A DNA stretch of 64,000 nt from the IMG/VR virus record IMGVR_UViG_3300033049_000066, positions 229,279-293,278 of that record. One strand, written 5' to 3'. This document shows positions 2,926 through 39,902 of this stretch, one piece after another. Numbering within the stretch: position 1 is the stretch's first letter; each line of letters opens with the position of its first letter. The notes beneath the pieces were generated by a model, which worked only from the letters and a program-made list of their open reading frames with translations, had not been told where the DNA came from and searched no databases. Both the position numbers and the translations under genes were made by a program.

Positions 2926-2988
2926 AGTATATCCTTTTATATTCATATATTTATGGTGAGTCGTTATAACCCAATATAATAAAAGAGG

Positions 2989-3017
2989 TTGACATGTGAG
3001 TACATAGGTGCTATAAT
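2989..3017 (+). promoter_or_regulatory. sigma70-type promoter for gp55
   Basis: TTGACA-17 nt-TATAAT, perfect consensus. Confidence 0.85.
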
Positions 3018-3046
3018 TAAAGCTCATTAAGCTAAAGAGGAGAATT

Positions 3047-5017
3047 ATGGCTAAACGGAAAAAGAATTATTTAAATAACAAGGATATGCTCAAGGAAATT
3101 CACCTTAGCAAAATATCATATTGTGCGTTTACTGACAAGGTAGAGGACAATCAACAAGATTTCATCGTGGAAAGTGCTGACGCGATCTTCGGTACGCAGA
3201 ATGTAGAGGTTAAGAAAGAAACCGAAACCTCAGCTGCGGTTTTTGAAGACATCCCGGTAATACAGCTTGCGAGAAAAGCTAGGGCAGCGAGACTTACAAA
3301 ATTAGAAATTCCAACTGCGGTAGAAGATATAGTTGACACAGATATTGTATTTCGTGTAATGACGAACGAACACATTCCACGAGTCCCCAAGAAAAAATCC
3401 AAGGCACTACTAGCAAAAGAAGCAAAGCAAGCGAAATCCGACGCGATTTTTGACGAGCTTATGGATGGCGACGAGGATGGCGACGCTCCTACACCCACCG
3501 GGCCTGAGGTTATCTTGATCCCAATGCGTGTAAATTTTCCACCGTTTTTCCATTACCGGTTGACGGATGAACCGGGTGAACTAAAACTTGTCGGCAAATC
3601 CCACTGGCGTGGTGACTTAGAAACAGGCAGTTTCAACAAGACCAAGGGGCAAACTACAAACAATCTTGCTATGATGTACATCAAGCTCTGTGAGCGGTAC
3701 GGCACTAGAGGCAATTGGAGAGGGTATTGTGTAGATCAGGCCACAGAGGCTCTCACAGACCGTGGGTGGTTATTTGAAAATGAGATTACCGAAAATGATA
3801 AAATTTTATCATATAATGGCTCGACTATGGTTTGGTCTAACATTAATTCTATGTTTCGGGATAATTACAGTGGATTAATGCATAAACTTACATCTCGTAG
3901 CATCGATTCACTAATCACACCAAGTCATAAAATTGTAACCGATAAGGGGTTACTAAAGATTGAATATCTCAAAGAATCAGACCGGGTCGTTGTAATGGGT
4001 GATGCTGTGCCTACGGAGTTTGAGAAAACATACACAGATCAACTAGTTGAATTAGCTGGATGGATCATAACAGAAGGTAATTATCAACCCAAAAAGAAAA
4101 TTGTTACGATTTATCAAAACGAAGGTTCTTATGCCGACCGCATACGTAAATGTTTACATAACTTAAATTACTCGTTTTCTGAACGCAAATCTTCGAAATC
4201 CGAGAATATTTCATTTGCTATTAAGAGGAAGTACTGGGATGAAATCACAAATCTATTACCTAACAAAAATCTAACTATGGATTTTATTTTAAAACTTACG
4301 TATAATCAACGTGAATTATTAGTTAAAACAATGGTGGATGGTGATGGACACAGACACGGATTATTAATGCGATATACTCAGAAAAATAAAGAACACATGG
4401 ATCATTTTCAAACGTTATGTGCGCTAATTGGGTTAAAATCAAATGTTCATTATGTCGAGAATAAAATGTCATTCGGTAAGCCGGTTAACTATTATGTAAC
4501 AAATGTGTTTTCAAAACGAGGAAACTACACACGTGGATCGGCTATCGACATGCACGGTGGGAAAGACAATGGGAGTAGACACGTCGGCAAGGGGAAATTT
4601 TTCCACCCCAACAAGCCCACGGTGCAGTACGATGGTACGGTATGGTGCCCGGAGACTGACTACGGTTGCTTCTTAGCTAGGCGTAACGGAAAAGTATATT
4701 TGACCGGAAATACGTACAACGATGAAATGCAGGGGCAGGCTTTACTCCAGCTTTCGCAAATTGGACTTCAGTTCAATGAGCTAAAATCGCAGAATCCATT
4801 TGCGTACTACACTGCCGCGGTCACGAACAGTTTTACCCGGGTCTTAAACATTGAGAAAAAGATGCAAAATATCCGAGACGATATCCTCGAGTCAAATGGG
4901 CTCACTCCTAGCTGGACAAGGCAATACGCGAATGATGCGAAAAAGATGCCCCAGTATGATTACAATCTAAATGATCCCAGGAAGAAAAAGGCCAAAGAAG
5001 AGGAACCTAAAACTTAG
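3047..5017 (+). CDS. gp55: T4-like late sigma factor, intein-containing
   Basis: N-terminal NYLNNKDML. After intein removal the protein reads NWRGY|TYNDEM...QFNELKSQNPFAYYT...F.RVLNIEKK. It lies upstream of gp47/gp46 as in T4. Confidence 0.88.
   Translation: MAKRKKNYLNNKDMLKEIHLSKISYCAFTDKVEDNQQDFIVESADAIFGTQNVEVKKETETSAAVFEDIPVIQLARKARAARLTKLEIPTAVEDIVDTDIVFRVMTNEHIPRVPKKKSKALLAKEAKQAKSDAIFDELMDGDEDGDAPTPTGPEVILIPMRVNFPPFFHYRLTDEPGELKLVGKSHWRGDLETGSFNKTKGQTTNNLAMMYIKLCERYGTRGNWRGYCVDQATEALTDRGWLFENEITENDKILSYNGSTMVWSNINSMFRDNYSGLMHKLTSRSIDSLITPSHKIVTDKGLLKIEYLKESDRVVVMGDAVPTEFEKTYTDQLVELAGWIITEGNYQPKKKIVTIYQNEGSYADRIRKCLHNLNYSFSERKSSKSENISFAIKRKYWDEITNLLPNKNLTMDFILKLTYNQRELLVKTMVDGDGHRHGLLMRYTQKNKEHMDHFQTLCALIGLKSNVHYVENKMSFGKPVNYYVTNVFSKRGNYTRGSAIDMHGGKDNGSRHVGKGKFFHPNKPTVQYDGTVWCPETDYGCFLARRNGKVYLTGNTYNDEMQGQALLQLSQIGLQFNELKSQNPFAYYTAAVTNSFTRVLNIEKKMQNIRDDILESNGLTPSWTRQYANDAKKMPQYDYNLNDPRKKKAKEEEPKT
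3728..4711 (+). mobile_element. Intein (328 aa) with LAGLIDADG homing endonuclease in gp55
   Basis: Starts CVDQATEALTDRGW. Block B ITPSHK; endonuclease motifs LAGWIITEG and MVDGDG. Ends VWCPETDYGCFLARRNGKVYLTGN followed by T(+1). Confidence 0.92.
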
Positions 5018-14510: not shown

Positions 14511-16235
14511 ATGGCAGATAAAAAGAATGCTGGTGGATGGAAGAAGTATTTTAAAGTAGCAGACACCTCAGGAACAATGAGTCCGATTAGTGGGCTTGGG
14601 AATATCAATGGGCAAGTTGGGTTTAAAAACTATCAGAGTAACTTACCAGAGGTGTACACCGGTCACCCTAATAGAATCGAACGTTACAATCAGTACGAAG
14701 CAATGGATATGGATAGCGAAGTTAACGCTTGCTTAGATATCATATCTGAATTTTCAACTCAAACAAACGAGCAGAACAATACCGCATTTGACTTCTTCTT
14801 TAATGAAACACCGACCGACAACGAAATTAACATTATTACTCAGCAACTTAATCAATGGGTGAAACTGAACGAATTTGATAAACGCATTTTTAAAATATTT
14901 CGCAATACAATTAAGTACGGCGATCAAGTTTTTATACGTGATCCAGAAACATTTAAATTATTTTGGGTTGAGACAAACAAAATTTCAAGAGTAATTGTAA
15001 ACGAAAGTGATGGTAAAAAGCCCGAGCAATACATTGTTCAAGACATAAATCCAAATTTCGAAAACTTAACAGTCGCAGCAAAAACAACAACTGATTTTCA
15101 ATCAGGTATGCCAAACCAAGGTTACACCGCGCCACAATCGTACACAATACCTGATCAACAAGGTGCGAGTACAGGTGGTCGTTTTTCAATGTCGCAGACA
15201 GAATCCGCTGTTGACGCAGAGCATATTGTACACATCAGCCTTACAGAAGGGCTAGACTACAACTGGCCTTTTGGACAATCAATACTTGAGCAAATATACA
15301 AAGTTTACAAACAAAAAGAATTACTTGAAGACGCTATTTTAATATATCGCATACAACGAGCACCGGAGCGCCGCATTTTTTATGTTGACACAGGCGATAT
15401 GCCAGCACATTTAGCAATGGGATTTGTTGAACGTATTAAGAACGAAATACACCAACGCAGAATACCAACACAGAGCGGTGGAGCAAACCAACTGGATGCG
15501 AGTTACAATCCAATTTCAATGAATGAAGATTACTTTTTCCCGCAAACCGCTGATGGACGTGGCTCGAGAGTAGAGACATTACCCGGTGGACAGAATCTGT
15601 CTGAGATCGACGACCTACGTTACTTCAACAACAAAATGGCACGTGGACTTCGAGTACCGTCAAGCTACCTACCAACTGGCCCAGATGACAGCCAAGGGAC
15701 ACTAAACGATGGACGCATGGGAACGGCACTGATCCAAGAATTCCGCTTCAATCAGTACTGCGAGAGAATACAAAATACTATCATCACGAAGCTAAACACA
15801 GAATTCAAGATGTTTTTACACTGGAGAGGCTTCAACATTGATTCCAAAATCTTCGACTTAAAATTTAACAACCCGCAAAACTTTGCTAGCTACAGACAAA
15901 CAGAGCTCGACGCCACGCGCCTTGGCAACTTCGGTGGTGTTACAGATATTCCTTACATGTCTAAGCGATTCGCCCTGAAACGCTACTTAGGGCTATCAGA
16001 AGCAGAGATGGTCGAGAACGAAAAAATGTGGCGCGAAGAAAATAACGTTCCAGATGAATCAGTTACTGGCGGCGCCGGTGATGACTTACGTGGTGTTGGT
16101 GTCACTCCTGGGGGAATGGACGCAGACTTGGGAGACCTAGATGATTTTGAAGGCGCCGACGAGCTTGACCTTGATCTCGACGGTGGCCCAGATGAAGCAG
16201 GTGCCGGAGCCGAGATAGATGTCGAAACGCCATAA
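14511..16235 (+). CDS. gp20: Portal protein
   Basis: LLEDAILIYRIQRAPERRIFYVDTG, EDYFFP and ETLPGGQNL motifs. Confidence 0.97.
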   Translation: MADKKNAGGWKKYFKVADTSGTMSPISGLGNINGQVGFKNYQSNLPEVYTGHPNRIERYNQYEAMDMDSEVNACLDIISEFSTQTNEQNNTAFDFFFNETPTDNEINIITQQLNQWVKLNEFDKRIFKIFRNTIKYGDQVFIRDPETFKLFWVETNKISRVIVNESDGKKPEQYIVQDINPNFENLTVAAKTTTDFQSGMPNQGYTAPQSYTIPDQQGASTGGRFSMSQTESAVDAEHIVHISLTEGLDYNWPFGQSILEQIYKVYKQKELLEDAILIYRIQRAPERRIFYVDTGDMPAHLAMGFVERIKNEIHQRRIPTQSGGANQLDASYNPISMNEDYFFPQTADGRGSRVETLPGGQNLSEIDDLRYFNNKMARGLRVPSSYLPTGPDDSQGTLNDGRMGTALIQEFRFNQYCERIQNTIITKLNTEFKMFLHWRGFNIDSKIFDLKFNNPQNFASYRQTELDATRLGNFGGVTDIPYMSKRFALKRYLGLSEAEMVENEKMWREENNVPDESVTGGAGDDLRGVGVTPGGMDADLGDLDDFEGADELDLDLDGGPDEAGAGAEIDVETP

Positions 16236-17753: not shown

Positions 17754-18386
17754 ATGAGTATCTTACAAGAATATTTAAATTATGACGCAGCTAATGTTGA
17801 GCTTCTCACTGAAGCCAACAGCAGCGGCGGCAAAGATTTATACATGAAGGGCATCTGCATTCAAGGCGATCAAAAAAACGCCAACCAACGCATTTACCCT
17901 GCAAGAGAAATCACAACAGCCGTTAAAACACTTAACGAACAAATCAACGGTGGCTATTCTGTCTTAGGCGAAATAGACCATCCGGAAGATTTAAAGATCA
18001 ATTTAGACCGCGTGTCGCACATGATTACAGAAATGTGGATGGAAGGCGCTAACGGTTACGGTAAGTTAAAGATACTTCCAACTCCGATGGGCAAAGTTAT
18101 TGAAACAATGCTACAGTCAAAAGTTAAATTAGGCGTTTCGTCTAGGGGAAGTGGTAATGTTAACGAAGCCACAGGACACGTCAGTGAATTTGAAATAATC
18201 ACTGTAGATATCGTAGCACAGCCATCTGCTCCGGAAGCGTATCCGACAGCTATATATGAAGGCATCATGAATATGAAAGGTGGCTTGAAGTTGTTAGGTA
18301 TTGCAGAAGACGCTTGCGAGAACAAACGTGTACAAAGATATTTGAAAGAAGGCGTAATTGCGTTAATTAAAGATTTAAAGATTTAA
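17754..18386 (+). CDS. gp21: Prohead protease
   Basis: NANQRIYP, GEIDHP, GVSSRGSG, DIVAQPSAP. Confidence 0.96.
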   Translation: MSILQEYLNYDAANVELLTEANSSGGKDLYMKGICIQGDQKNANQRIYPAREITTAVKTLNEQINGGYSVLGEIDHPEDLKINLDRVSHMITEMWMEGANGYGKLKILPTPMGKVIETMLQSKVKLGVSSRGSGNVNEATGHVSEFEIITVDIVAQPSAPEAYPTAIYEGIMNMKGGLKLLGIAEDACENKRVQRYLKEGVIALIKDLKI

Positions 18387-18982
18387 TGACAGAAGCGTTT
18401 GTATATAAGTGGACACAAATATCAACTAAGAAATGGTACATTGGGTCCAGAACAGCAAAAGGTTGTTCTATGCAAGATGGGTATATTTGCTCTAGTAGAA
18501 TTGTTAAACCTTTAATTTTAGAAAATGCAGTTGAATGGAATAGAGAAATACTAGCAGTTGGCACACCAGATAATATGCGCCAGCTCGAAAGTAAAATGCT
18601 ACAGCAGCTTGATGCAAAAAATGATCCGATGAGTTTTAACGAATCAAACGCAGATGGCAAATTTAGTACCGCGGGGATTGAACCGTGGAACAAAGATAAG
18701 AAAACGGGGCACACGCCGTGGAATAAAGGACTTGCTAAAGAGCTTCAGCCAGGATACGGATTGAAGCATACTAAAGAAAATAAAGAATTATTTAGTAAAA
18801 ATCAGCAAGGAGCGAGTAATTCTATGTATGGTGCTACGCCGTGGAATAAAGGTAATACAGGTAAGAAGTGGTTTAACAACGGCTCAATTGAAAAAACTTT
18901 TATACCAGGTAACGAATTGGAAAGTTTTGTTGTAGGAAGATTGACAAAACCCAATATGAGATCGAAAGATCTTAAAATTTAG
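18386..18982 (+). mobile_element. Free-standing GIY-YIG (Seg-like) homing endonuclease
   Basis: FVY...WYIGSR...Y.CSS; PWNKG repeats; NUMOD3-like HTKE. Confidence 0.85.
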
Positions 18983-20112: not shown

Positions 20113-21306
20113 ATGTCACAAGCACTATTAGAAAACCGTTGGGGTGAGACCAAAGAAGCATTGCTTGAAGGTCTTGACGGAACGAAACGTTCATCAATGA
20201 GCGTTATCTTAGAAAATACCCGTAACCACTTAGCAGAATCTGCTTCAAGTGGCGCTACTGCCGCTGGTAACGTTGCAACATTAAACCGTGTTATTTTACC
20301 AGTTATTCGACGTGTTATGCCTACCGTTATTGCTAACGAATTAGTAGGTGTTCAACCAATGAGTGGACCTGTTTCACAGATTCACACACTTCGCGTTCGT
20401 TACGGTGAAACATTAACTGACGGTTCTGCCGCAGCTACTAACGTTGCACCAGGTGATGAAGCTTTATCACCATTCAAAATTGCTCAGGCTTACTCAGCTG
20501 GTAATGGCGCAGCATCACAAGCTAACTATACAGCAGCAGCAACAGCTGGAATGGAAGGCACAGGTGGACGTTCAATAAGCGTACAGATCCTGAAGCAGGC
20601 AGTTGAAGCTAAAACTCGTAAGTTACAAGCACGTTGGACTTTCGAATCAGCACAAGACGCACAGTCTATGCATGGCATCGACGTAGAAGCAGAAATCATG
20701 GCAGCATTAGCGCAAGAAATTACCGCTGAAATTGACCAAGAAATTCTTCTTTCTTTACGTTCACTTGCTAGCACAGAAGAAACTTACAACCAGGCAGCAG
20801 TGTCAGGTACAGCTACATTTGTAGGTGACGAACACGCGGCTCTTGCAGTATTGATCAATCGTACTGCTAATAAGATCGCTCAGCGTACACGTCGTGGTGC
20901 AGGTAACTATGCAGTTGTTTCACCAGCAGCATTAACAGTACTTCAATCAGCTACTACCTCTGCTTTTGCACGTACAACTGAAGGTACTTTTGAAGCACCT
21001 ACAAACACTAAGTTTGTTGGTACTCTTAACTCAGCAATGAAAGTTTACGTTGACAGCTATGCTGCTGACAGTTCGCCAGTACTTGTTGGTTATAAAGGTT
21101 CAAGTGAATCAGACGCACCAGCGTTCTATTGTCCTTACATACCTTTAATGAGTTCAGGTGTTGTACTTGATCCAAGTACGTTTGAACCAGTTGTTAGCTT
21201 CATGACCAGATATGGTTATGTTGAGCTTACAAATACTGCTTCATCTTTCGGCAACGCTGGAGATTATCTCGGAGAAGTGGCCATTTCTAACCTTAGCTTC
21301 CAGTAA
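20113..21306 (+). CDS. gp23: Major capsid protein
   Basis: GVQPMSGP, KTRKLQARWT.E.AQD, EIDQEI, FYCPYIPL, MTRYG. Confidence 0.97.
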   Translation: MSQALLENRWGETKEALLEGLDGTKRSSMSVILENTRNHLAESASSGATAAGNVATLNRVILPVIRRVMPTVIANELVGVQPMSGPVSQIHTLRVRYGETLTDGSAAATNVAPGDEALSPFKIAQAYSAGNGAASQANYTAAATAGMEGTGGRSISVQILKQAVEAKTRKLQARWTFESAQDAQSMHGIDVEAEIMAALAQEITAEIDQEILLSLRSLASTEETYNQAAVSGTATFVGDEHAALAVLINRTANKIAQRTRRGAGNYAVVSPAALTVLQSATTSAFARTTEGTFEAPTNTKFVGTLNSAMKVYVDSYAADSSPVLVGYKGSSESDAPAFYCPYIPLMSSGVVLDPSTFEPVVSFMTRYGYVELTNTASSFGNAGDYLGEVAISNLSFQ

Positions 21307-21442: not shown

Positions 21443-22040
21443 ATGCAACCTTATACATACATACTTACTAAAACATATACCAACTAACACCTTTTACTAT
21501 GGTGTACGTTATCAAAACGTCAAGAAGAAAATTCCCATTGCTAAAGATTTGTGGGTAAAGTATTTTACAAGTAGTCCAAAAATCAAAAGTTTAATTACAG
21601 AATACGGTGCCGATAGCTTTGAATTTGAGATCCGCAAAATATTTAAAACCCCTGAGCGAGCTACTGCCTGGGAAGCAAAAGTACTCAAGCGGATGAAAGT
21701 GTTAGAAAACAGAAAATGGATTAACGCAAATATCGCCGGGCACATTATGCCTACAGCTGAATCAAATAAGAAGATAAGTGACTTTCACAAAGGAAAGCCA
21801 AAATCCGCAGAACACAGACGTAAGATTAGCGAATCTGTAACAGGAACAACAAAACCGCCTCGGCATGAATGGTTGCAGAATCGCCCCGCTGAACTCATCA
21901 TTGCGCTAATAACCGCCCTTCAAAAAGATAAATTAACATGCTGGAATTTAATAAAAGATCCTGATATCCGGAAACAAAAAGCCTTCGAACACGAAATGGG
22001 CCGGTGTCAGCTGATGGTTGATCGTCTGCAAAAAATATAA
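21443..22040 (+). pseudogene. Frameshifted GIY-YIG homing endonuclease
   Basis: Removing one ATAC from the (ATAC)3 run restores MQPYTYLLKHIPTNTFYYGVR...YFTSS. NUMOD3-like KSAEHRRKISES. Confidence 0.75.
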
Positions 22041-22124: not shown

Positions 22125-22328
22125 TCACCTCGCTTGCAATCCAATCCAGATGATCACCGTGTCGAAGGCGGCCTCTGCCTCTGGTGACGCCTCTGAGAAA
22201 ATCTTGTCACCTAAGATGTAATTATAATTCGCAAAATCAAGCTGCTTGAAATTCGTCGGGATATTGAGCAACGGACGCCACCTCTTGCCGGCATACCACG
22301 TATCTTTCTTGGCCTTCCTCTGTATCAT
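22125..22328 (-). CDS. Small hypothetical protein (67 aa)
   Basis: ATGA-coupled to the upstream ORF; ends IIWIGLQAR. Confidence 0.6.
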   Translation of the reverse strand: MIQRKAKKDTWYAGKRWRPLLNIPTNFKQLDFANYNYILGDKIFSEASPEAEAAFDTVIIWIGLQAR

Positions 22329-22516
22329 TTGTTGAGCTCCTCCCAGACCCTTGCACCTGCAAAGGCAGTGCAAAAATCTTCACTCCACGCAGTGTACAGA
22401 ACATCATCAATTTTAAAATTGAGGTGATTAAAATCTGTGATCCTTGGTAAAAAGTACCGAGGAACCGGCGTCCAGTAATTTGGACTACCATTGTCAATGT
22501 TTATATAATATATCAT
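22325..22516 (-). CDS. Small hypothetical protein (63 aa)
   Basis: Downstream of a TTGACT-17-TATACT promoter (22615-22643); ends VWEELNK. Confidence 0.6.
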   Translation of the reverse strand: MIYYINIDNGSPNYWTPVPRYFLPRITDFNHLNFKIDDVLYTAWSEDFCTAFAGARVWEELNK

Positions 22517-22796
22517 ATTTTTACCACTAGCATCCTATGTCCAATTACCCGAGCTCTGCTCGGTTGCCTTCTAAGAAGGCAAGGCGTGTAATCGTTCTAC
22601 GCTTGCATAGTATGAGTATAACAGGTAAAATCGCAAAAGTCAATGATATTTCTGTATTTAGAGCAAATTACTCTAAATGGTTGCGAACTTACTATAAATA
22701 AGTTAAGCTAGTGCTGTAAACAGACACAGCAAGAAGCGCGAAATTATGAAAGATAAAGCATCCGATAAAATATGGAATAATCTTAAAAAAGAATAC

Positions 22797-22825
22797 TTGA
22801 CCATTGAGCAAAAAAAAGCTATAAT
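22797..22825 (+). promoter_or_regulatory. sigma70-type promoter
   Basis: TTGACC-17 nt-TATAAT. Confidence 0.7.
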
Positions 22826-22913
22826 ACAAGAACATTATATGCATATTGCTAATGATTCTATAGCAGCGGTACGTATTTTTCTTAAGACTCAAAAATAAGA
22901 TAACGGTTTAAAA

Positions 22914-24088
22914 ATGTTAACATCATACCAGGAAAAAGTTAAGTTACTAATGATATTAAAGTACGGCAGCTTAGAGCTAGCCTTTTTATCTGACGCTAAA
23001 TTTGATAAAACTGAAACCATTATTCTTAGGGACTATTTGTCAATTAAGGTACATCAGAGCAACTCCAAGATATATTACCCGGAAGAAAACAATGAGTGAA
23101 ACCGAGACATTCATGATATTAAAATACGGCAGCATTGCCGAAGCCTTTCGCGAGTACATTTGTCTAACCGAAGACGAAAAAAAGCTAATTCCGACGGACG
23201 AATATGAAATACTAATGGAATATGAATACGAATTGCACCCATTTAACTCCACGCCATTTGAGCCAAAATGAATACACAGACCTTCCTCGCCCTTAAATTT
23301 GGTAGCCTGTTTCGAGCATATCGATATTGGCTTGGAGATGTGAGATTGCGTACAACAATCGATCTCACTGCGGAACAACATTCAATCATGAACATCTATT
23401 TCGAGGACCTTAGCGTCAGCGAAAGAATACGACTTTATAGAAGAGACTGGAAAACCTAATGCAAACGTTTAACTACTACCGAACAAAATTGTACCTGCGC
23501 ATCACCTATGGAAGCGAAGAGGACATTCAAGAAGCAGGTAAGAACCACGAGGACGAGTCCAAGCGGACCCTAATCGCCACCTTCCTAGCCGAGGCCGCTA
23601 AACGAAATGACAGCATCAAATTCTCAAGAAAACGTTAAATTATTTCTGATCCTCCGTCACGGCTCAGTTCAGTCAGCATTCATAAAATGGATGATATACG
23701 AAGACCTTGACCTCTTTAGTAAGGAAGAAAACGCCCTGCTTGAAGCACTTTTTGCGGACTACTATCCAAATTTACTTCGCGCAAAAAATCCCATGCTTCA
23801 AAAACAGAATCAAAAAGAGGTTGACAAATGACAAAACGTATGCTAAAATATAAGCTTAACAACGCTCTCAAAAGAAGCAGACTATTCTCAACCAATTCAA
23901 CCTCTAGGATGAAAATAATGACACTAGAACAAGACCATCTTATTACACTGCTGCGCATAAAATATGGTGATATCGACGTCGTAACTGGTATGTGGTTGTA
24001 TAATGATCCGGAACTTAGTCCTGAAGAACTCGCGGCAGTTGATGCTTGGCTAAATTCCGATGAAAAAGAGGTTGACATCTTGGGCTAG
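22914..24088 (+). CDS. Tandem family of six small proteins (22914-23099, 23092-23271, 23268-23459, 23459-23638, 23607-23831, ~23918-24088)
   Basis: Overlapping start/stop coupling; shared N-terminal motif ILKYGS/ALKFGS/RITYGS/ILRHGS/RIKYGD. Confidence 0.75.
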
Positions 24089-24138
24089 TTGTCGTATAAT
24101 ATATATATAACAGTTAGATAACGAGCAAAGGTATAGAT
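24072..24138 (+). promoter_or_regulatory. Early promoter plus conserved leader
   Basis: TTGACA-17-TATAAT then ATAACAGTTAGATAAC, the same leader as the four repeats at 39.7-41.8 kb. Confidence 0.85.
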
Positions 24139-24450
24139 ATGTCAGCAAGTAAAACTATTATTAAAGAACTCCGGAAAGAAATCAGGGAATTATCAAATAA
24201 ACTCGAGGATTCGGAGAAGCATTTAGTTAGGCAAAAGCGACATATTCAAAGAATGGAGACTGCACATCTCGTAAAACTGTCGGATCTAAATTCACGAACA
24301 AATATCATAGCAAGTCGCCTGCGTTATAACTTTTCAAAAGAACTGACTTGGATGGCACTAGTCGATGACGGAGAATCGGTCTTCAGGATAATTCAAGAGG
24401 TTATTACTCAGCTTCGCGATACAGCTCATCCAAGCCAAGTTAACAGATAG
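24139..24450 (+). CDS. Hypothetical coiled-coil protein
   Basis: ORF directly behind an early promoter and RBS. Confidence 0.7.
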   Translation: MSASKTIIKELRKEIRELSNKLEDSEKHLVRQKRHIQRMETAHLVKLSDLNSRTNIIASRLRYNFSKELTWMALVDDGESVFRIIQEVITQLRDTAHPSQVNR

Positions 24451-24456
24451 AATTCG

Positions 24457-24565
24457 AACAACAAACAACAAACAACAAACAACAACAAACAACAAACAAC
24501 AACAAACAACAAACAACAACAAACAACAACAAACAACAACAAACAACAACAAACAACAACAAACA
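24457..24565 (+). repeat. A/C-only simple repeat (AAACAAC and AAACAACAAC units)
   Basis: About 109 nt with no G or T, intergenic. Confidence 0.97.
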
Positions 24566-24571
24566 TATATT

Positions 24572-26464
24572 ATGAAGTCAATACCAAAGTTCGAAAACCT
24601 AAATAAAGGTGGGGTACCGCTCGGGACATTATCTGTCTTTTCGTCCGACACTATATCATCAAAACCTCTAAGTAGCAAAGATCTCGTATGGGATCGATTG
24701 CAAAACGGAATCACACCAAAACCGGACTGGTCAGCAATAAGTATGACCCAGGCAATGTCCCGATTAAATCAGGCAATGCGAAAAGCTAAACCCACAGTGG
24801 AATTTTTTGTCAAAAAATCGCGTGACTACGAGCAAAATGGGATTGCTGATGATTGAATGAACACAGATTACAAAAAGTTGGAATCACCATATCCGAGTAA
24901 ATACTATAACCATTGAATACGTAGAATAGAATTATGATATTACCAAAGAAATTGTTTGAGAAAATAGAATTTTTTGAACACTCAATTGACCAGAGCTGCG
25001 GCCCTGTTGAAGTCAGTGACAAATTTATCCTACATTTCAGGGACTGGTGGCGCCGGAAAAAAGTGATAAAAATTAATCGTATCATTGAACATTACAACGC
25101 AGATGACGGATCATTTGTTCATAGATCGACACCCGGCGCAGCAGATTTATATAACCAATTAAACGACTGGGCAATATCAACTTTTGAAGAAAAGCTTACT
25201 AGCATATCAAGAAAGTATAAAACTCACAACAATGATAATATAATTGAGTTGAATCCAAAACCGGCCAACTTAGATGATGAGTAAAAGACGTAAGCGTAGA
25301 CAGCGCGGTAAGCGCATCGAAGAGCGAAAACTAGCTCTTAAAGTTTGGGTGAGGCTACAACGGAGACAAGGCCCTTCGGAAATGCCACCAGCCCCGCACT
25401 GGCTTAGACATTTCTCGTCCGTAGCACAAGAGCTTCACACTCTTGTAGTCGATCAGAATTCGTTAGAATATGAAACCACAACACGGGAAATCGCATACCG
25501 ACGAAAGAAAGATACCGCCGCTAAAAAAAGAAGAAGAACATATATTAAAAACGTTTATCTAGCAAAACACAAGCCCGTAATAGAATGAAAGAATCCAAAA
25601 TACAGATAACCCAACGCAAGATACGCAATGCGGTCCGTCGCCACAAAGATCGTGAAGCTGCCGCAGTATGGAAAAAGCTCACAGCATCCGAACCCAGGTC
25701 AATTGAGCATTACTTTAGCGAATTTAATGCTGCGGTCAAGTTGTCTTACAAGACACAACGACAACATCGAGAAAATAACTTATTAAAAACTGCCACGGGC
25801 TTAACAGCTACGACAATATCAACAGATGAGGTCCAAGATGGAAAAAAGTGAGATAATCTACGAGAGCGTGTGCCGCGACGTGATTCAATGCGAGCACTAT
25901 ATCGCGTGGGAATTTTATTCCGAGACGAATGACGATGAACGGTACTACGAATCCAACCTCACCTGTCATTCGTGTCAGCTAGTAGGGCAATCGTACAACA
26001 TAACCGAGTACAATGAATTCTGCCCCAATCAGAAAATTCTCAACAAGTATCACGACCGCCGCGTGATTGAAATCATAGCCCACGAGAAAAAGTGCGCAGA
26101 AGAAAAAATGTGGAAAATACTAAATGAGTAAACTTAGCAAAACTCAAGCAAAAGTTTGGGATCGCTTGATAAATCAGCCAGTCCCACCACGACCAACGTA
26201 CCCAACCGCAGGTACCAAGTACCACAATACAAAAACCAACCGGCTGCACATCTACAATGGCAAACAATGGATAGAGATAACGTGAGTAAGAACCTTAGCA
26301 AAACTCAAGCAAAAGTTTGGGAGAGACTGAACGCCAAGCCCACCTCGCTCGCAGATAAAGAAATTGAGATGATCCGCCGCTACATAAAATCCGACGAAGT
26401 ATTACAGTCCGCGAAGATGACGCTAGACATAGAACTACTCCTGGCAGACCGAAACAAAAATTAA
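24572..26464 (+). CDS. Cluster of small hypothetical proteins (24572-24856, 24934-25284, 25274-25588, 25585-25851, ~25838-26131, 26124-26285, 26282-26464)
   Basis: Mostly coupled ORFs; six of seven carry a (V/M)WxxL motif. Confidence 0.7.
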
Positions 26465-39668: not shown

Positions 39669-39902
39669 AATCTTTCCTTTGCTCTTTATCTAACTGTTAT
39701 ATACATTATATGACATATAACGCCAAAGGTCAACCTCTAATTGCGGTTATTTAAGATTATTTTAGGGCTGTTTTACTATGATTTACTGGTACTGCTACGT
39801 GAATGCCGGCCAAAAACGCCGCTAAAAACCAGTATTCTTATATAAATCAATAACTTACCAATATATTACTCTGATTTAATAAATGCTAGAACCTTATATA
39901 AA

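What the first reader, a model, noticed from the sequence alone, without database searches (positions are those of the whole stretch)
22914..24088. Tandem six-member microprotein family with an h-x-L-K-Y-G-S N-terminal motif
Seen: LMILKYGS, FMILKYGS, FLALKFGS, YLRITYGS (ORF 23459-23638, missed by the track), FLILRHGS and LLRIKYGD in ~60-75-aa coupled ORFs with diverged remainders. Inference: a gene accordion of helical effectors under diversifying selection, possibly a variant of the WxxL tag system.
Basis: partly seen in the sequence, partly recalled or inferred. Interest (0 to 1): 0.6.

Follow-up and report, generated by a model that had tools for sequence, protein, structure and literature searches.

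The report
Uncatalogued small-protein family in marine jumbo phage
Six back-to-back genes in an uncultured marine giant T4-like phage encode ~60-residue helical proteins of a real but uncatalogued family; the array is old and conserved between related phages, and its function is unknown.

Summary
The 8-residue motif occurs six times in the six-frame translation of the whole 293-kb phage contig (1.4 expected). All six lie near the N-termini of six consecutive, mostly overlapping + strand ORFs at 22914-24088.

A profile built only from outside sequences recognises five of them (E 6e-8 to 3e-16). The fourth, 23459-23638, keeps only the motif (E 0.26). The family has about 130 clusters among 1.84 billion proteins, nearly all 50-80-aa metagenomic singletons.

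No recurring match appears in Pfam, PHROGs, NCBIfam, PADLOC, PDB sequences or 50,697 phage genomes, and fold searches give only noise.

AlphaFold2 models show a small helical bundle. The motif is helix 1 plus a Gly-Ser turn, and the conserved A..W lies on helix 2. So the motif looks like fold core, not a detachable tag.

The 'accordion under diversifying selection' reading fails. Each copy has a colinear orthologue in related phages (35-54% identity) and is much further from its own paralogues. Neighbouring genes are equally diverged, and omega is about 0.14-0.24 where it can be measured.

A sigma70-type promoter conserved at nucleotide level lies just upstream. My best guess, by inference only, is early-expressed acidic protein binders acting on host or phage targets.

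The parts
22914..23099 (+). Member 1 (P0001, 61 aa, motif LMILKYGS)
   Evidence: Outside-only profile E 6.2e-8. Orthologue is L005 3969-4178, 45% identity.
23092..23271 (+). Member 2 (P0002, 59 aa, FMILKYGS; C-terminal EYEILMEYEY...PFEPK subfamily; net charge -9)
   Evidence: Outside-only profile E 8.6e-16. Orthologues are L005 4317-4502 (54%) and P0007-P0011. The longer TTG ORF from 23002 is not supported by the orthologues.
23268..23459 (+). Member 3 (P0003, 63 aa, FLALKFGS)
   Evidence: Outside-only profile E 8.3e-10. Orthologue is L005 5090-5272, 35% identity, with a shared LS..ERI tail.
23459..23638 (+). Member 4 (P0004, 59 aa, YLRITYGS): degenerate or doubtful member
   Evidence: Only the motif region scores (E 0.26). 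No outside relative at E<0.01. It has the same size, the same motif offset and sits inside the array. The identical protein is on record from another contig.
23607..23831 (+). Member 5 (P0005, 74 aa, FLILRHGS; YPNL subfamily)
   Evidence: Outside-only profile E 2.6e-16. Orthologue is L005 5259-5438, 41% identity. AF2 model has pLDDT 75 with core helices 6-18, 21-30 and 39-50.
23918..24088 (+). Member 6 (56 aa from ATG 23918; the ORF is open from 23828; LLRIKYGD; HLITLL...WLY...AVDAWL subfamily; net charge -10)
   Evidence: Outside-only profile E 1.5e-10. Orthologues are L005 5511-5750 (51%) and P0049, P0051, P0052, P0073 and P0108, all starting at MT.EQ.
22797..22825 (+). Sigma70-type promoter TTGACC-N17-TATAAT embedded in ORF 22746-22898, upstream of the array
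   Evidence: 11 of 12 consensus matches. A 28-nt block including the -35 element, and the -10 element, are 100% identical to L005 although the surrounding DNA is diverged.
23821..23849 (+). Partial promoter cassette (AAAGAGGTTGACA-N17-TAAAAT) between members 5 and 6
   Evidence: It would give member 6 its own start point upstream of the ATG at 23918.
24064..24138 (+). Full conserved early-promoter cassette closing the array (drives ORF 24139-24450)
   Evidence: 12 of 12 consensus matches. It is one of about 40 near-identical cassettes in the contig. L005 has a promoter at the same place, 5747.

Best explanation
The six ORFs belong to an uncatalogued, phage-restricted family of ~60-residue, mostly acidic, all-helical proteins. 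The family signature is T-[FY]-L-I-L-K-Y-G-S-h-x-x-A-[YF]-x-x-W ... F-[ST]-x-[ED]-E-x-x-h-[LI]-x-x-[YW]. The host is an uncultured marine jumbo T4-like phage. The 'LKYGS' motif is modelled as helix 1, the Gly-Ser turn and the start of helix 2 of a small helical bundle. It therefore looks like part of the fold's hydrophobic core, while the last helix and tail differ between subfamilies. The array is an old set of paralogues kept in the same order in related phages, each under purifying selection. It is not a recent amplification. It lies in a plastic small-gene region after the major capsid gene and downstream of a conserved sigma70-type promoter. The copies are therefore most likely made early by host RNA polymerase. 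Inferred, not shown: each paralogue uses the common scaffold and its own C-terminal surface to bind a different host or phage protein, as host-takeover or anti-defence 'monkey-wrench' proteins do.
For: Family reality: the profile search gave 133 hits at E<=1e-3, nearly all 48-90 aa, and an outside-only HMM scored five window ORFs at 6e-8 to 3e-16. Signature and acidity: column statistics show K 116/122, G 120/122, W 98/122 and E 101/122, with median pI 5.0 and 76% of members below pI 6. Fold: AF2 gave pLDDT 85 and pTM 0.66 with four helices for the member-2 orthologue, and pLDDT 75 for P0005. Protein-level constraint: synonymous sites in the motif vary between copies. Old array: colinear orthologue pairs appear in L005 and L009, with copy number 6 to 9. 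Divergence equals that of neighbouring genes, while the MCP is 88% identical. Omega is 0.14-0.24. Phage context: portal, prohead protease and gp23-like MCP lie upstream, the contig is a 293-kb virus record, and the source is seawater. Early expression: the promoter at 22797 is conserved at nucleotide level, and about 40 copies of an early-type promoter cassette bracket such small-gene blocks, as PeSL cassettes do in hyperplastic regions of T4-like phages (PMC4122927).
Against: No expression data exist: no RNA run holds the stretch. A TATAAATA (T4 late-promoter-like) site at 22693 lies 45 nt upstream of ORF 22746, so late transcription cannot be excluded, although that octamer is not enriched in the genome. 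No binding partner is known. The homodimer test gave no verdict. Member 4 is barely recognisable as a member.
Confidence: 0.5

Rival explanations
1. The conserved N-terminal motif is a capsid-targeting-type tag, like the 10-residue CTS of T4 internal proteins IPI, IPII and IPIII. It would load diverse small proteins into the prohead for injection, with removal by the prohead protease.
For: A conserved N-terminal segment with a diverged remainder, an array lying just after the head genes (portal, gp21-like protease, MCP), and a TATAAATA site at 22693. Some relatives start with K-T-Y, as the T4 CTS does according to my memory of its sequence (the paper read does not print it). CTS biology is summarised in PMC9026906.
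Against: Only 4 of 122 members have [LI]-x-E directly after the motif and 9 of 122 have it anywhere nearby, so there is no conserved gp21-type cleavage site. The motif is modelled inside a confident helical bundle together with the conserved A..W and F[ST]xEE elements further on. Removing it would leave about 40 residues. The members are mostly acidic, whereas CTS-bearing proteins of T4-like phages are described as basic (PMC9026906). A conserved sigma70-type promoter drives the array.
Confidence: 0.07
2. They are small helix-turn-helix-like DNA-binding regulators (Myb, homeodomain or Cro-like three-helix bundles) that control phage or host transcription.
For: The weak best structural rows include Myb-like Cdc5, GT-1, homeodomains and SANT (Z 3.0-3.8). 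The weak PDB sequence hit to MYB3 covers the F-T-x-E-E helix start (E 0.31).
Against: All Z values are below 4, with hundreds of unrelated rows at similar values. Foldseek E values exceed 2. 76% of members are acidic, and window members 2 and 6 carry net charges of -9 and -10. There is no HTH family hit in Pfam for any of 122 members.
Confidence: 0.1
3. The conserved half is a shared docking or oligomerisation module. Paralogues would pair with each other, or all bind one common hub, and the variable halves would act as adaptors.
For: Helix 1 carries four to five consecutive hydrophobic residues plus an invariant Lys-Tyr. Natural two-domain fusions of about 110 aa exist (P0055, P0068, P0096, P0106, P0125). 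Translational coupling of members 1 to 5 would give matched amounts.
Against: There is no positive evidence. The only complex job (P0005 homodimer) returned 'no verdict' and counts neither way. The monomer models are already compact.
Confidence: 0.15
4. It is a recently amplified gene accordion under diversifying selection.
For: Tandem arrangement, and copy number that differs between related phages (6 to 9).
Against: Within-genome paralogues share only the motif region. Every copy except member 4 has a closer colinear orthologue in other phages. Omega is 0.14-0.24 and divergence is no greater than that of the neighbours.
Confidence: 0.03

Closest known systems
Small early ORFs of hyperplastic regions (HPRs) of T4-like phages, bracketed by PeSL promoter/stem-loop cassettes (Arbiol 2010, PMC2839356; Comeau 2014, PMC4122927)
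   Same: A block of many ~50-100-aa ORFs between core gene modules. Highly conserved sigma70-type promoter cassettes repeat through the genome. Gene content varies between related phages.
   Different: Here one recognisable protein family fills the block with 6 to 9 old paralogues in conserved order. HPR genes are usually described as unrelated ORFans. The cassette sequence here is this phage's own. A stem-loop/terminator part was not tested.
T4 internal proteins IPI/IPII/IPIII and their capsid targeting sequence (PMC9026906)
   Same: A short conserved N-terminal segment with diverged remainders, in a T4-related phage, near the head genes.
   Different: No conserved [LI]-x-E protease site. The motif is part of a confidently modelled helix bundle. 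The proteins are acidic and only ~60 aa. A sigma70-type promoter lies upstream.
T4 AsiA (anti-sigma factor, PF09010)
   Same: A small all-helical early phage protein. By my recollection its hydrophobic first helix reads ILIKFS and forms the binding surface.
   Different: There is no homology: hhalign probability 0.35%, no PF09010 match in the contig, and no Pfam hit for the six ORFs even at E<=10 or for any of the 122 family members at E<=0.05.
Myb/SANT/homeodomain three-helix bundles
   Same: Three to four short helices. The F-[ST]-x-E-E helix start resembles the W-[ST]-x-E-E-D start of Myb repeats. These are the top weak structural rows.
   Different: Z<=3.8 and E>=0.3 are noise level. The element order differs (the W precedes the F[ST]xEE). 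The proteins are acidic.

Membership tests
LKYGS small-protein family (uncatalogued; defined here by alignment A4 and the outside-only HMM) | Significant match to a profile built without the window's own sequences | tested here: met
   P0005 2.6e-16, P0002 8.6e-16, member 6 1.5e-10, P0003 8.3e-10, P0001 6.2e-8 against 4,637 ORFs. P0004 scores only 0.26, so for that ORF the feature is not met.
LKYGS small-protein family | Length of about 50-80 aa, with motif [FY]LILKYGS at residues ~8-20, followed by A..W and F[ST]xEE | tested here: met
   In the window the motif is more degenerate than the family consensus. P0004 lacks A..W.
Gene accordion (recent tandem amplification) | Tandem copies more similar to each other than to orthologues elsewhere | tested here: not met
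   Best paralogue pair is E 5e-6 over 20 residues, against orthologues at 1e-9 to 1e-21 over the full length.
Diversifying selection | dN/dS above 1, or faster divergence than neighbouring genes | tested here: not met
   Omega is 0.14-0.24 where dS is measurable and dS is saturated elsewhere. Identity of 34-54% compares with 35-57% for neighbours. Site-wise tests were not possible with so few close sequences.
T4-type CTS-tagged internal proteins | N-terminal propeptide ending in a prohead-protease site ([LI]-x-E) | tested here: not met
   4 of 122 members have it directly after the motif.
T4-type CTS-tagged internal proteins | Presence in virions and late expression | not testable with these tools
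   The phage is uncultured and no RNA or proteome data exist.
AsiA (PF09010) | Profile similarity to AsiA | tested here: not met
   hhalign probability 0.35% and no PF09010 match in the contig.
HTH / Myb-like DNA-binding domains | Significant sequence or fold match | tested here: not met
   There is no recurring Pfam family over 122 members. Z<=3.8. PDB sequence E>=0.31.
WxxL-motif microproteins of the same region | N-terminal [EK]x[VI]W[DEKN][RKN]L motif | tested here: not met
   None of the six ORFs carries it. It occurs in ORFs 22746-22898 and 24572-24856 and in contig ORF 9732.

The most novel reading that the evidence does not exclude
The conserved N-terminal half (helix 1, the invariant K-Y-G-S turn, and A..W) is a common docking module. 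It would deliver a set of different C-terminal 'payload' helices to one shared partner: a host hub such as RNA polymerase or a protease, or the phage's own prohead. That would make it a modular tag-and-adaptor system specific to a clade of marine jumbo T4-like phages.
Probability: 0.12. Interest if true: 0.7.

Novelty: new member of a known kind. Interest (0 to 1): 0.35.

Why it matters
Giant marine phages carry hundreds of tiny genes of unknown role. Here a block of them resolves into one definable family of about 130 sequence clusters. It has a clear signature, a confident fold model, conserved subfamilies and conserved gene order. That gives a concrete handle for expression, pull-down and toxicity screens, and for a Pfam or PHROG entry. 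It also shows that a conserved N-terminal motif with a diverged remainder can be an old structural core, not a tag or a sign of an arms-race accordion.

Tried and rejected
**Database and sequence searches that found nothing**
- Pfam and PHROGs on the six ORFs gave nothing below E 0.1.
- Pfam, PHROGs, NCBIfam and PADLOC over all 122 members gave no family hit by more than two members.
- tblastn of P0031 and P0002 against 50,697 phage records gave no match at E<=1.
- A profile search against PDB sequences gave a best E of 0.31.
- A full-text search for 'ILKYGS' found 0 papers.
- Cluster look-up found only singletons on short contigs, named 'hypothetical protein' at best.

**Fold searches**
- Foldseek against PDB and BFVD gave E>2.
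- VIA-align wide search gave Z<=3.8 and Z<=3.2 for the two models.
- ESM Atlas by shape gave no hit. ESM Atlas by features gave a best score of 0.75, which is only a lead.

**Searches for more loci**
- With A3 it found no relative in IMG/VR other than the own record.

**Specific hypotheses tested**
- The AsiA lead was rejected.
- Complex prediction on a P0005 homodimer gave 'no verdict' (score 0.02, mark 0.42). It is reported here only and is evidence neither way.
- A nucleotide-level signal in the motif was rejected because synonymous sites vary.
- TATAAATA as a late-promoter marker is not enriched genome-wide (19 seen, about 30 expected), so the site at 22693 stays undecided.
- The minus-strand ORFs 23040-23381 and 23716-24078 were treated as shadow ORFs, because all database relatives match the + strand products.

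Full report
**Where the window lies.** The window is the last 64 kb (229279-293278) of a 293-kb IMG/VR virus record. That record was assembled from seawater metagenomes. Upstream of the finding lie a portal gene (14511-16235), a gp21-type prohead protease (17754-18386) and a gp23-type major capsid gene (20113-21306). Two homing-endonuclease ORFs flank the scaffold/MCP pair. The capsid gene is 68-71% identical in DNA to giant T4-related phages such as Salmonella 7t3, Sinorhizobium Phosso, Agrobacterium Atu_ph07 and Escherichia phAPEC6. So this is an uncultured marine jumbo T4-like phage.

**Observation.**
- The motif [LIVMFY][LIVMFY]x[LIV][KRT][YFH]G[SD] matches six times in the 586,558 residues of the six-frame translation of the whole contig.
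- Only 1.36 matches are expected, and all six are here, each 7-20 residues from the start of successive ORFs.
- ORFs 1 to 5 overlap by 8, 4, 1 and 32 nt.
- Orthologues show that ORF 6 most likely begins at ATG 23918 (MTLEQ...), downstream of a partial promoter at 23821-23849.
- Codons inside the motif differ freely between copies (cta/ctg/tta, ggc/ggt/gga, agc/agt/tca), so the constraint acts on the protein.

**Is it a family?** Pairwise similarity within the window is weak (phmmer E 0.003-0.03 for the best pairs). Relatives settle the question.
- A word-based search found four 60-61-aa orthologues of ORF 2.
- Their contigs (L005-L008) carry a syntenic array of eight to nine paralogues with a much sharper motif, x-[YF]-L-I-L-K-Y-G-S-x-x-x-A-x-x-x-W.
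- A profile of 18 sequences, searched against 1.84 billion representative proteins, returned 133 hits at E<=1e-3. Nearly all are 48-90 aa. Five are ~110-aa two-domain fusions, and a few long repetitive proteins were disregarded.
- An HMM built only from the outside sequences scores the window's ORFs at 2.6e-16 (ORF 5), 8.6e-16 (ORF 2), 1.5e-10 (ORF 6), 8.3e-10 (ORF 3) and 6.2e-8 (ORF 1).
- ORF 4 scores only 0.26, and a lone ORF at contig 122421-122585 scores 0.045.

So five ORFs are firm members. ORF 4 is a degenerate copy that keeps the motif and its position, but it has no orthologue.

**Signature and fold.** Over 122 members the near-invariant positions are L-I-L-K-Y-G-S (K 116, G 120), then A (96) and W (98) three and seven residues after the Ser. 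After a variable loop comes F-[ST]-x-[ED]-E (E 101), then h-[LI]-x-x-[YW].
- The median length is 61 aa and the median pI is 5.0. 76% of members have a pI below 6.
- AlphaFold2 with the family alignment gives pLDDT 85 and pTM 0.66 for the ORF-2 orthologue, with helices at 4-13, 16-24, 28-34 and 37-52.
- For P0005 it gives pLDDT 75, with helices at 6-18, 21-30 and 39-50.
- The motif is therefore helix 1 plus the Gly-Ser turn that starts helix 2.
- With A..W and the hydrophobic positions of the last helix, the motif reads as the core of a small bundle.

**No known relative.**
- There is no recurring hit in Pfam, PHROGs, NCBIfam or PADLOC for any of the 122 members.
- There is no tblastn hit in 50,697 phage genomes.
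- There is no PDB sequence hit better than E 0.31.
- The fold searches stay at noise level.
- The Myb/homeodomain rows (Z<=3.8) and the 'FTxEE' match to MYB3 are a generic helix-start resemblance.
- A remembered likeness to helix 1 of T4 AsiA was tested and rejected: hhalign probability 0.35%, and no PF09010 match in the contig.

**History of the array.** Each window copy has a full-length orthologue in L005, in the same order:

| Window ORF | L005 orthologue | Identity |
|---|---|---|
| ORF 1 | 3969 | 45% |
| ORF 2 | 4317 | 54% |
| ORF 3 | 5090 | 35% |
| ORF 5 | 5259 | 41% |
| ORF 6 | 5511 | 51% |

- The next gene, 24139-24450, matches L005 5807.
- A third phage fragment, L009, shows the same order.
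- Subfamily-specific C-terminal features are conserved across many outside sequences. They are EYEILMEYEY..PFEPR, [FY]PNL[NK]L, LS..ER[IL] and WLY.D..LS.EEL.AVDAWL.
- Paralogues within the window share little beyond about 20 residues.
- Non-family neighbours are equally diverged between the two phages (35-57%), whereas the MCP is 88% identical.
- NG86 estimates give omega 0.14-0.24 where dS is not saturated, similar to the MCP (0.15) and a neighbour (0.19).

This is an old, maintained paralogue set with occasional loss or gain (6 to 9 copies). It is not a fresh accordion, and there is no sign of diversifying selection.

**Expression context.** The contig holds 59 strict TTGAC-N16-18-TAWAAT sites. 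About 40 of them are copies of one ~70-nt cassette (AGAGGTTGACCTTTGGCGCTA..TGTCATATAATGTATATAACAGTTAGATAAC...), almost all on the + strand in front of small genes. This resembles the PeSL cassettes that bracket hyperplastic regions of T4-like phages (PMC4122927).
- A full cassette closes the array at 24064-24138, and L005 has a promoter at the same spot.
- A partial cassette lies at 23821.
- The shared C-terminal 'KEVD' of ORFs 5 and 6 is simply AAAGAGGTTGAC read as protein.
- Upstream of the array, TTGACC-N17-TATAAT at 22797-22825 lies inside ORF 22746-22898. Its -35 block (28 nt) and -10 element are identical in L005, although the ORF is only 46% identical in protein. That argues for a working promoter.
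- A TATAAATA site at 22693 could be a T4-type late promoter. However, that octamer is not enriched (19 seen, about 30 expected), so it stays undecided.
- No RNA data exist.

**Mechanism.** Shown: a protein family, its fold model, an old colinear array, purifying selection, and a conserved sigma70-type promoter. Inferred: early synthesis by host polymerase, and action as small acidic protein binders on host or phage targets, with target choice set by the subfamily-specific last helix and tail. I put about 0.85 on the structural and evolutionary description and about 0.4 on the functional reading, which gives 0.5 overall.

**Rivals.**
- A capsid-targeting tag (0.07) is weakened by the missing protease site (4 of 122), the folded-core position, the acidity and the promoter.
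- DNA-binding HTH (0.10) is weakened by the acidity and the noise-level matches.
- A shared docking or oligomerisation module (0.15) is suggested by the very hydrophobic helix 1 and the natural two-domain fusions, but it is untested.
- The accordion reading (0.03) is contradicted.

**Verdict.** It is a new family within a known kind of thing, namely multigene small-ORF blocks in plastic regions of T4-like phages. Interest is moderate (0.35).

Noticed in passing
window 24064-24138 (+), 2981-3050 (+), and minus strand at 39733, 41008, 41407, 41755; about 40 copies across the contig: A highly conserved ~70-nt sigma70-type promoter cassette (AGAGGTTGACCTTTGGCGCTAyWTGTCATATAATGTATATAACAGTTAGATAAC..AGCAAAGG..ATG). 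An imperfect inverted repeat spans the -10 element. It resembles PeSL cassettes of T4-like phages.
   Followed up: partly
window 23815-23831 and 24064-24088: The shared C-terminal 'KEVD' of ORFs 5 and 6 (and 'KKVDK' of L005 4867-5034) is the AAAGAGGTTGAC upstream/-35 part of the promoter cassette read in frame. So it is DNA-level, not protein-level, similarity.
   Followed up: partly
window 24457-24565: A tandem repeat (AACAACAAAC)n of about 11 copies lies between ORF 24139-24450 and ORF 24572-24856. It produces long Cys/Leu/Val shadow ORFs on the minus strand.
   Followed up: no
It is much more numerous in L005 than in this contig, where the regex matches 4 times, one of them in a 5-residue open frame.
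   Followed up: partly
window 22125-22373 (-) and 22325-22516 (-); L005 1590-1796, 1861-2061 (-), 2054-2236 (-), 3778-3969, 4499-4705: Another ~65-aa paralogue family ends in ...W.(K/E)L... and carries a central 'F.(I/F).(D/G)..(Y/F)' element. One copy interrupts the LKYGS array in L005.
   Followed up: no
L005 2829-3056 (-), 3572-3781, 7001-7246, 8339-8545: A third microprotein family (W-C-x-x-H-[EK]-S-x-G ... W-[FY]-F-E-x-E-x-D-A-x-L-F-A-L-K-F) appears in the relative's small-gene region. It was not looked for in the window.
   Followed up: no
window 18386-18982 and 21549-22040: Two homing-endonuclease-like ORFs (phrog_314) flank the scaffold/MCP pair. They are not close paralogues (BLASTP E 0.058), and the one after the MCP is absent in L005.
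   Followed up: partly
contig 122421-122585 (+), outside the window: A lone 55-aa ORF (MSDDELLVLIKYGTKGTAIFQWW...) is a weak candidate seventh member (E 0.045 to 0.28).
   Followed up: partly
L005 9618-10001 and L006 9063-9446: A small ORF carries a Gp23 (PF07068) N-terminal-like segment (...DLVSVQPM...) far from the real capsid gene. It matches 29 residues of the window's MCP at 62%.
   Followed up: no
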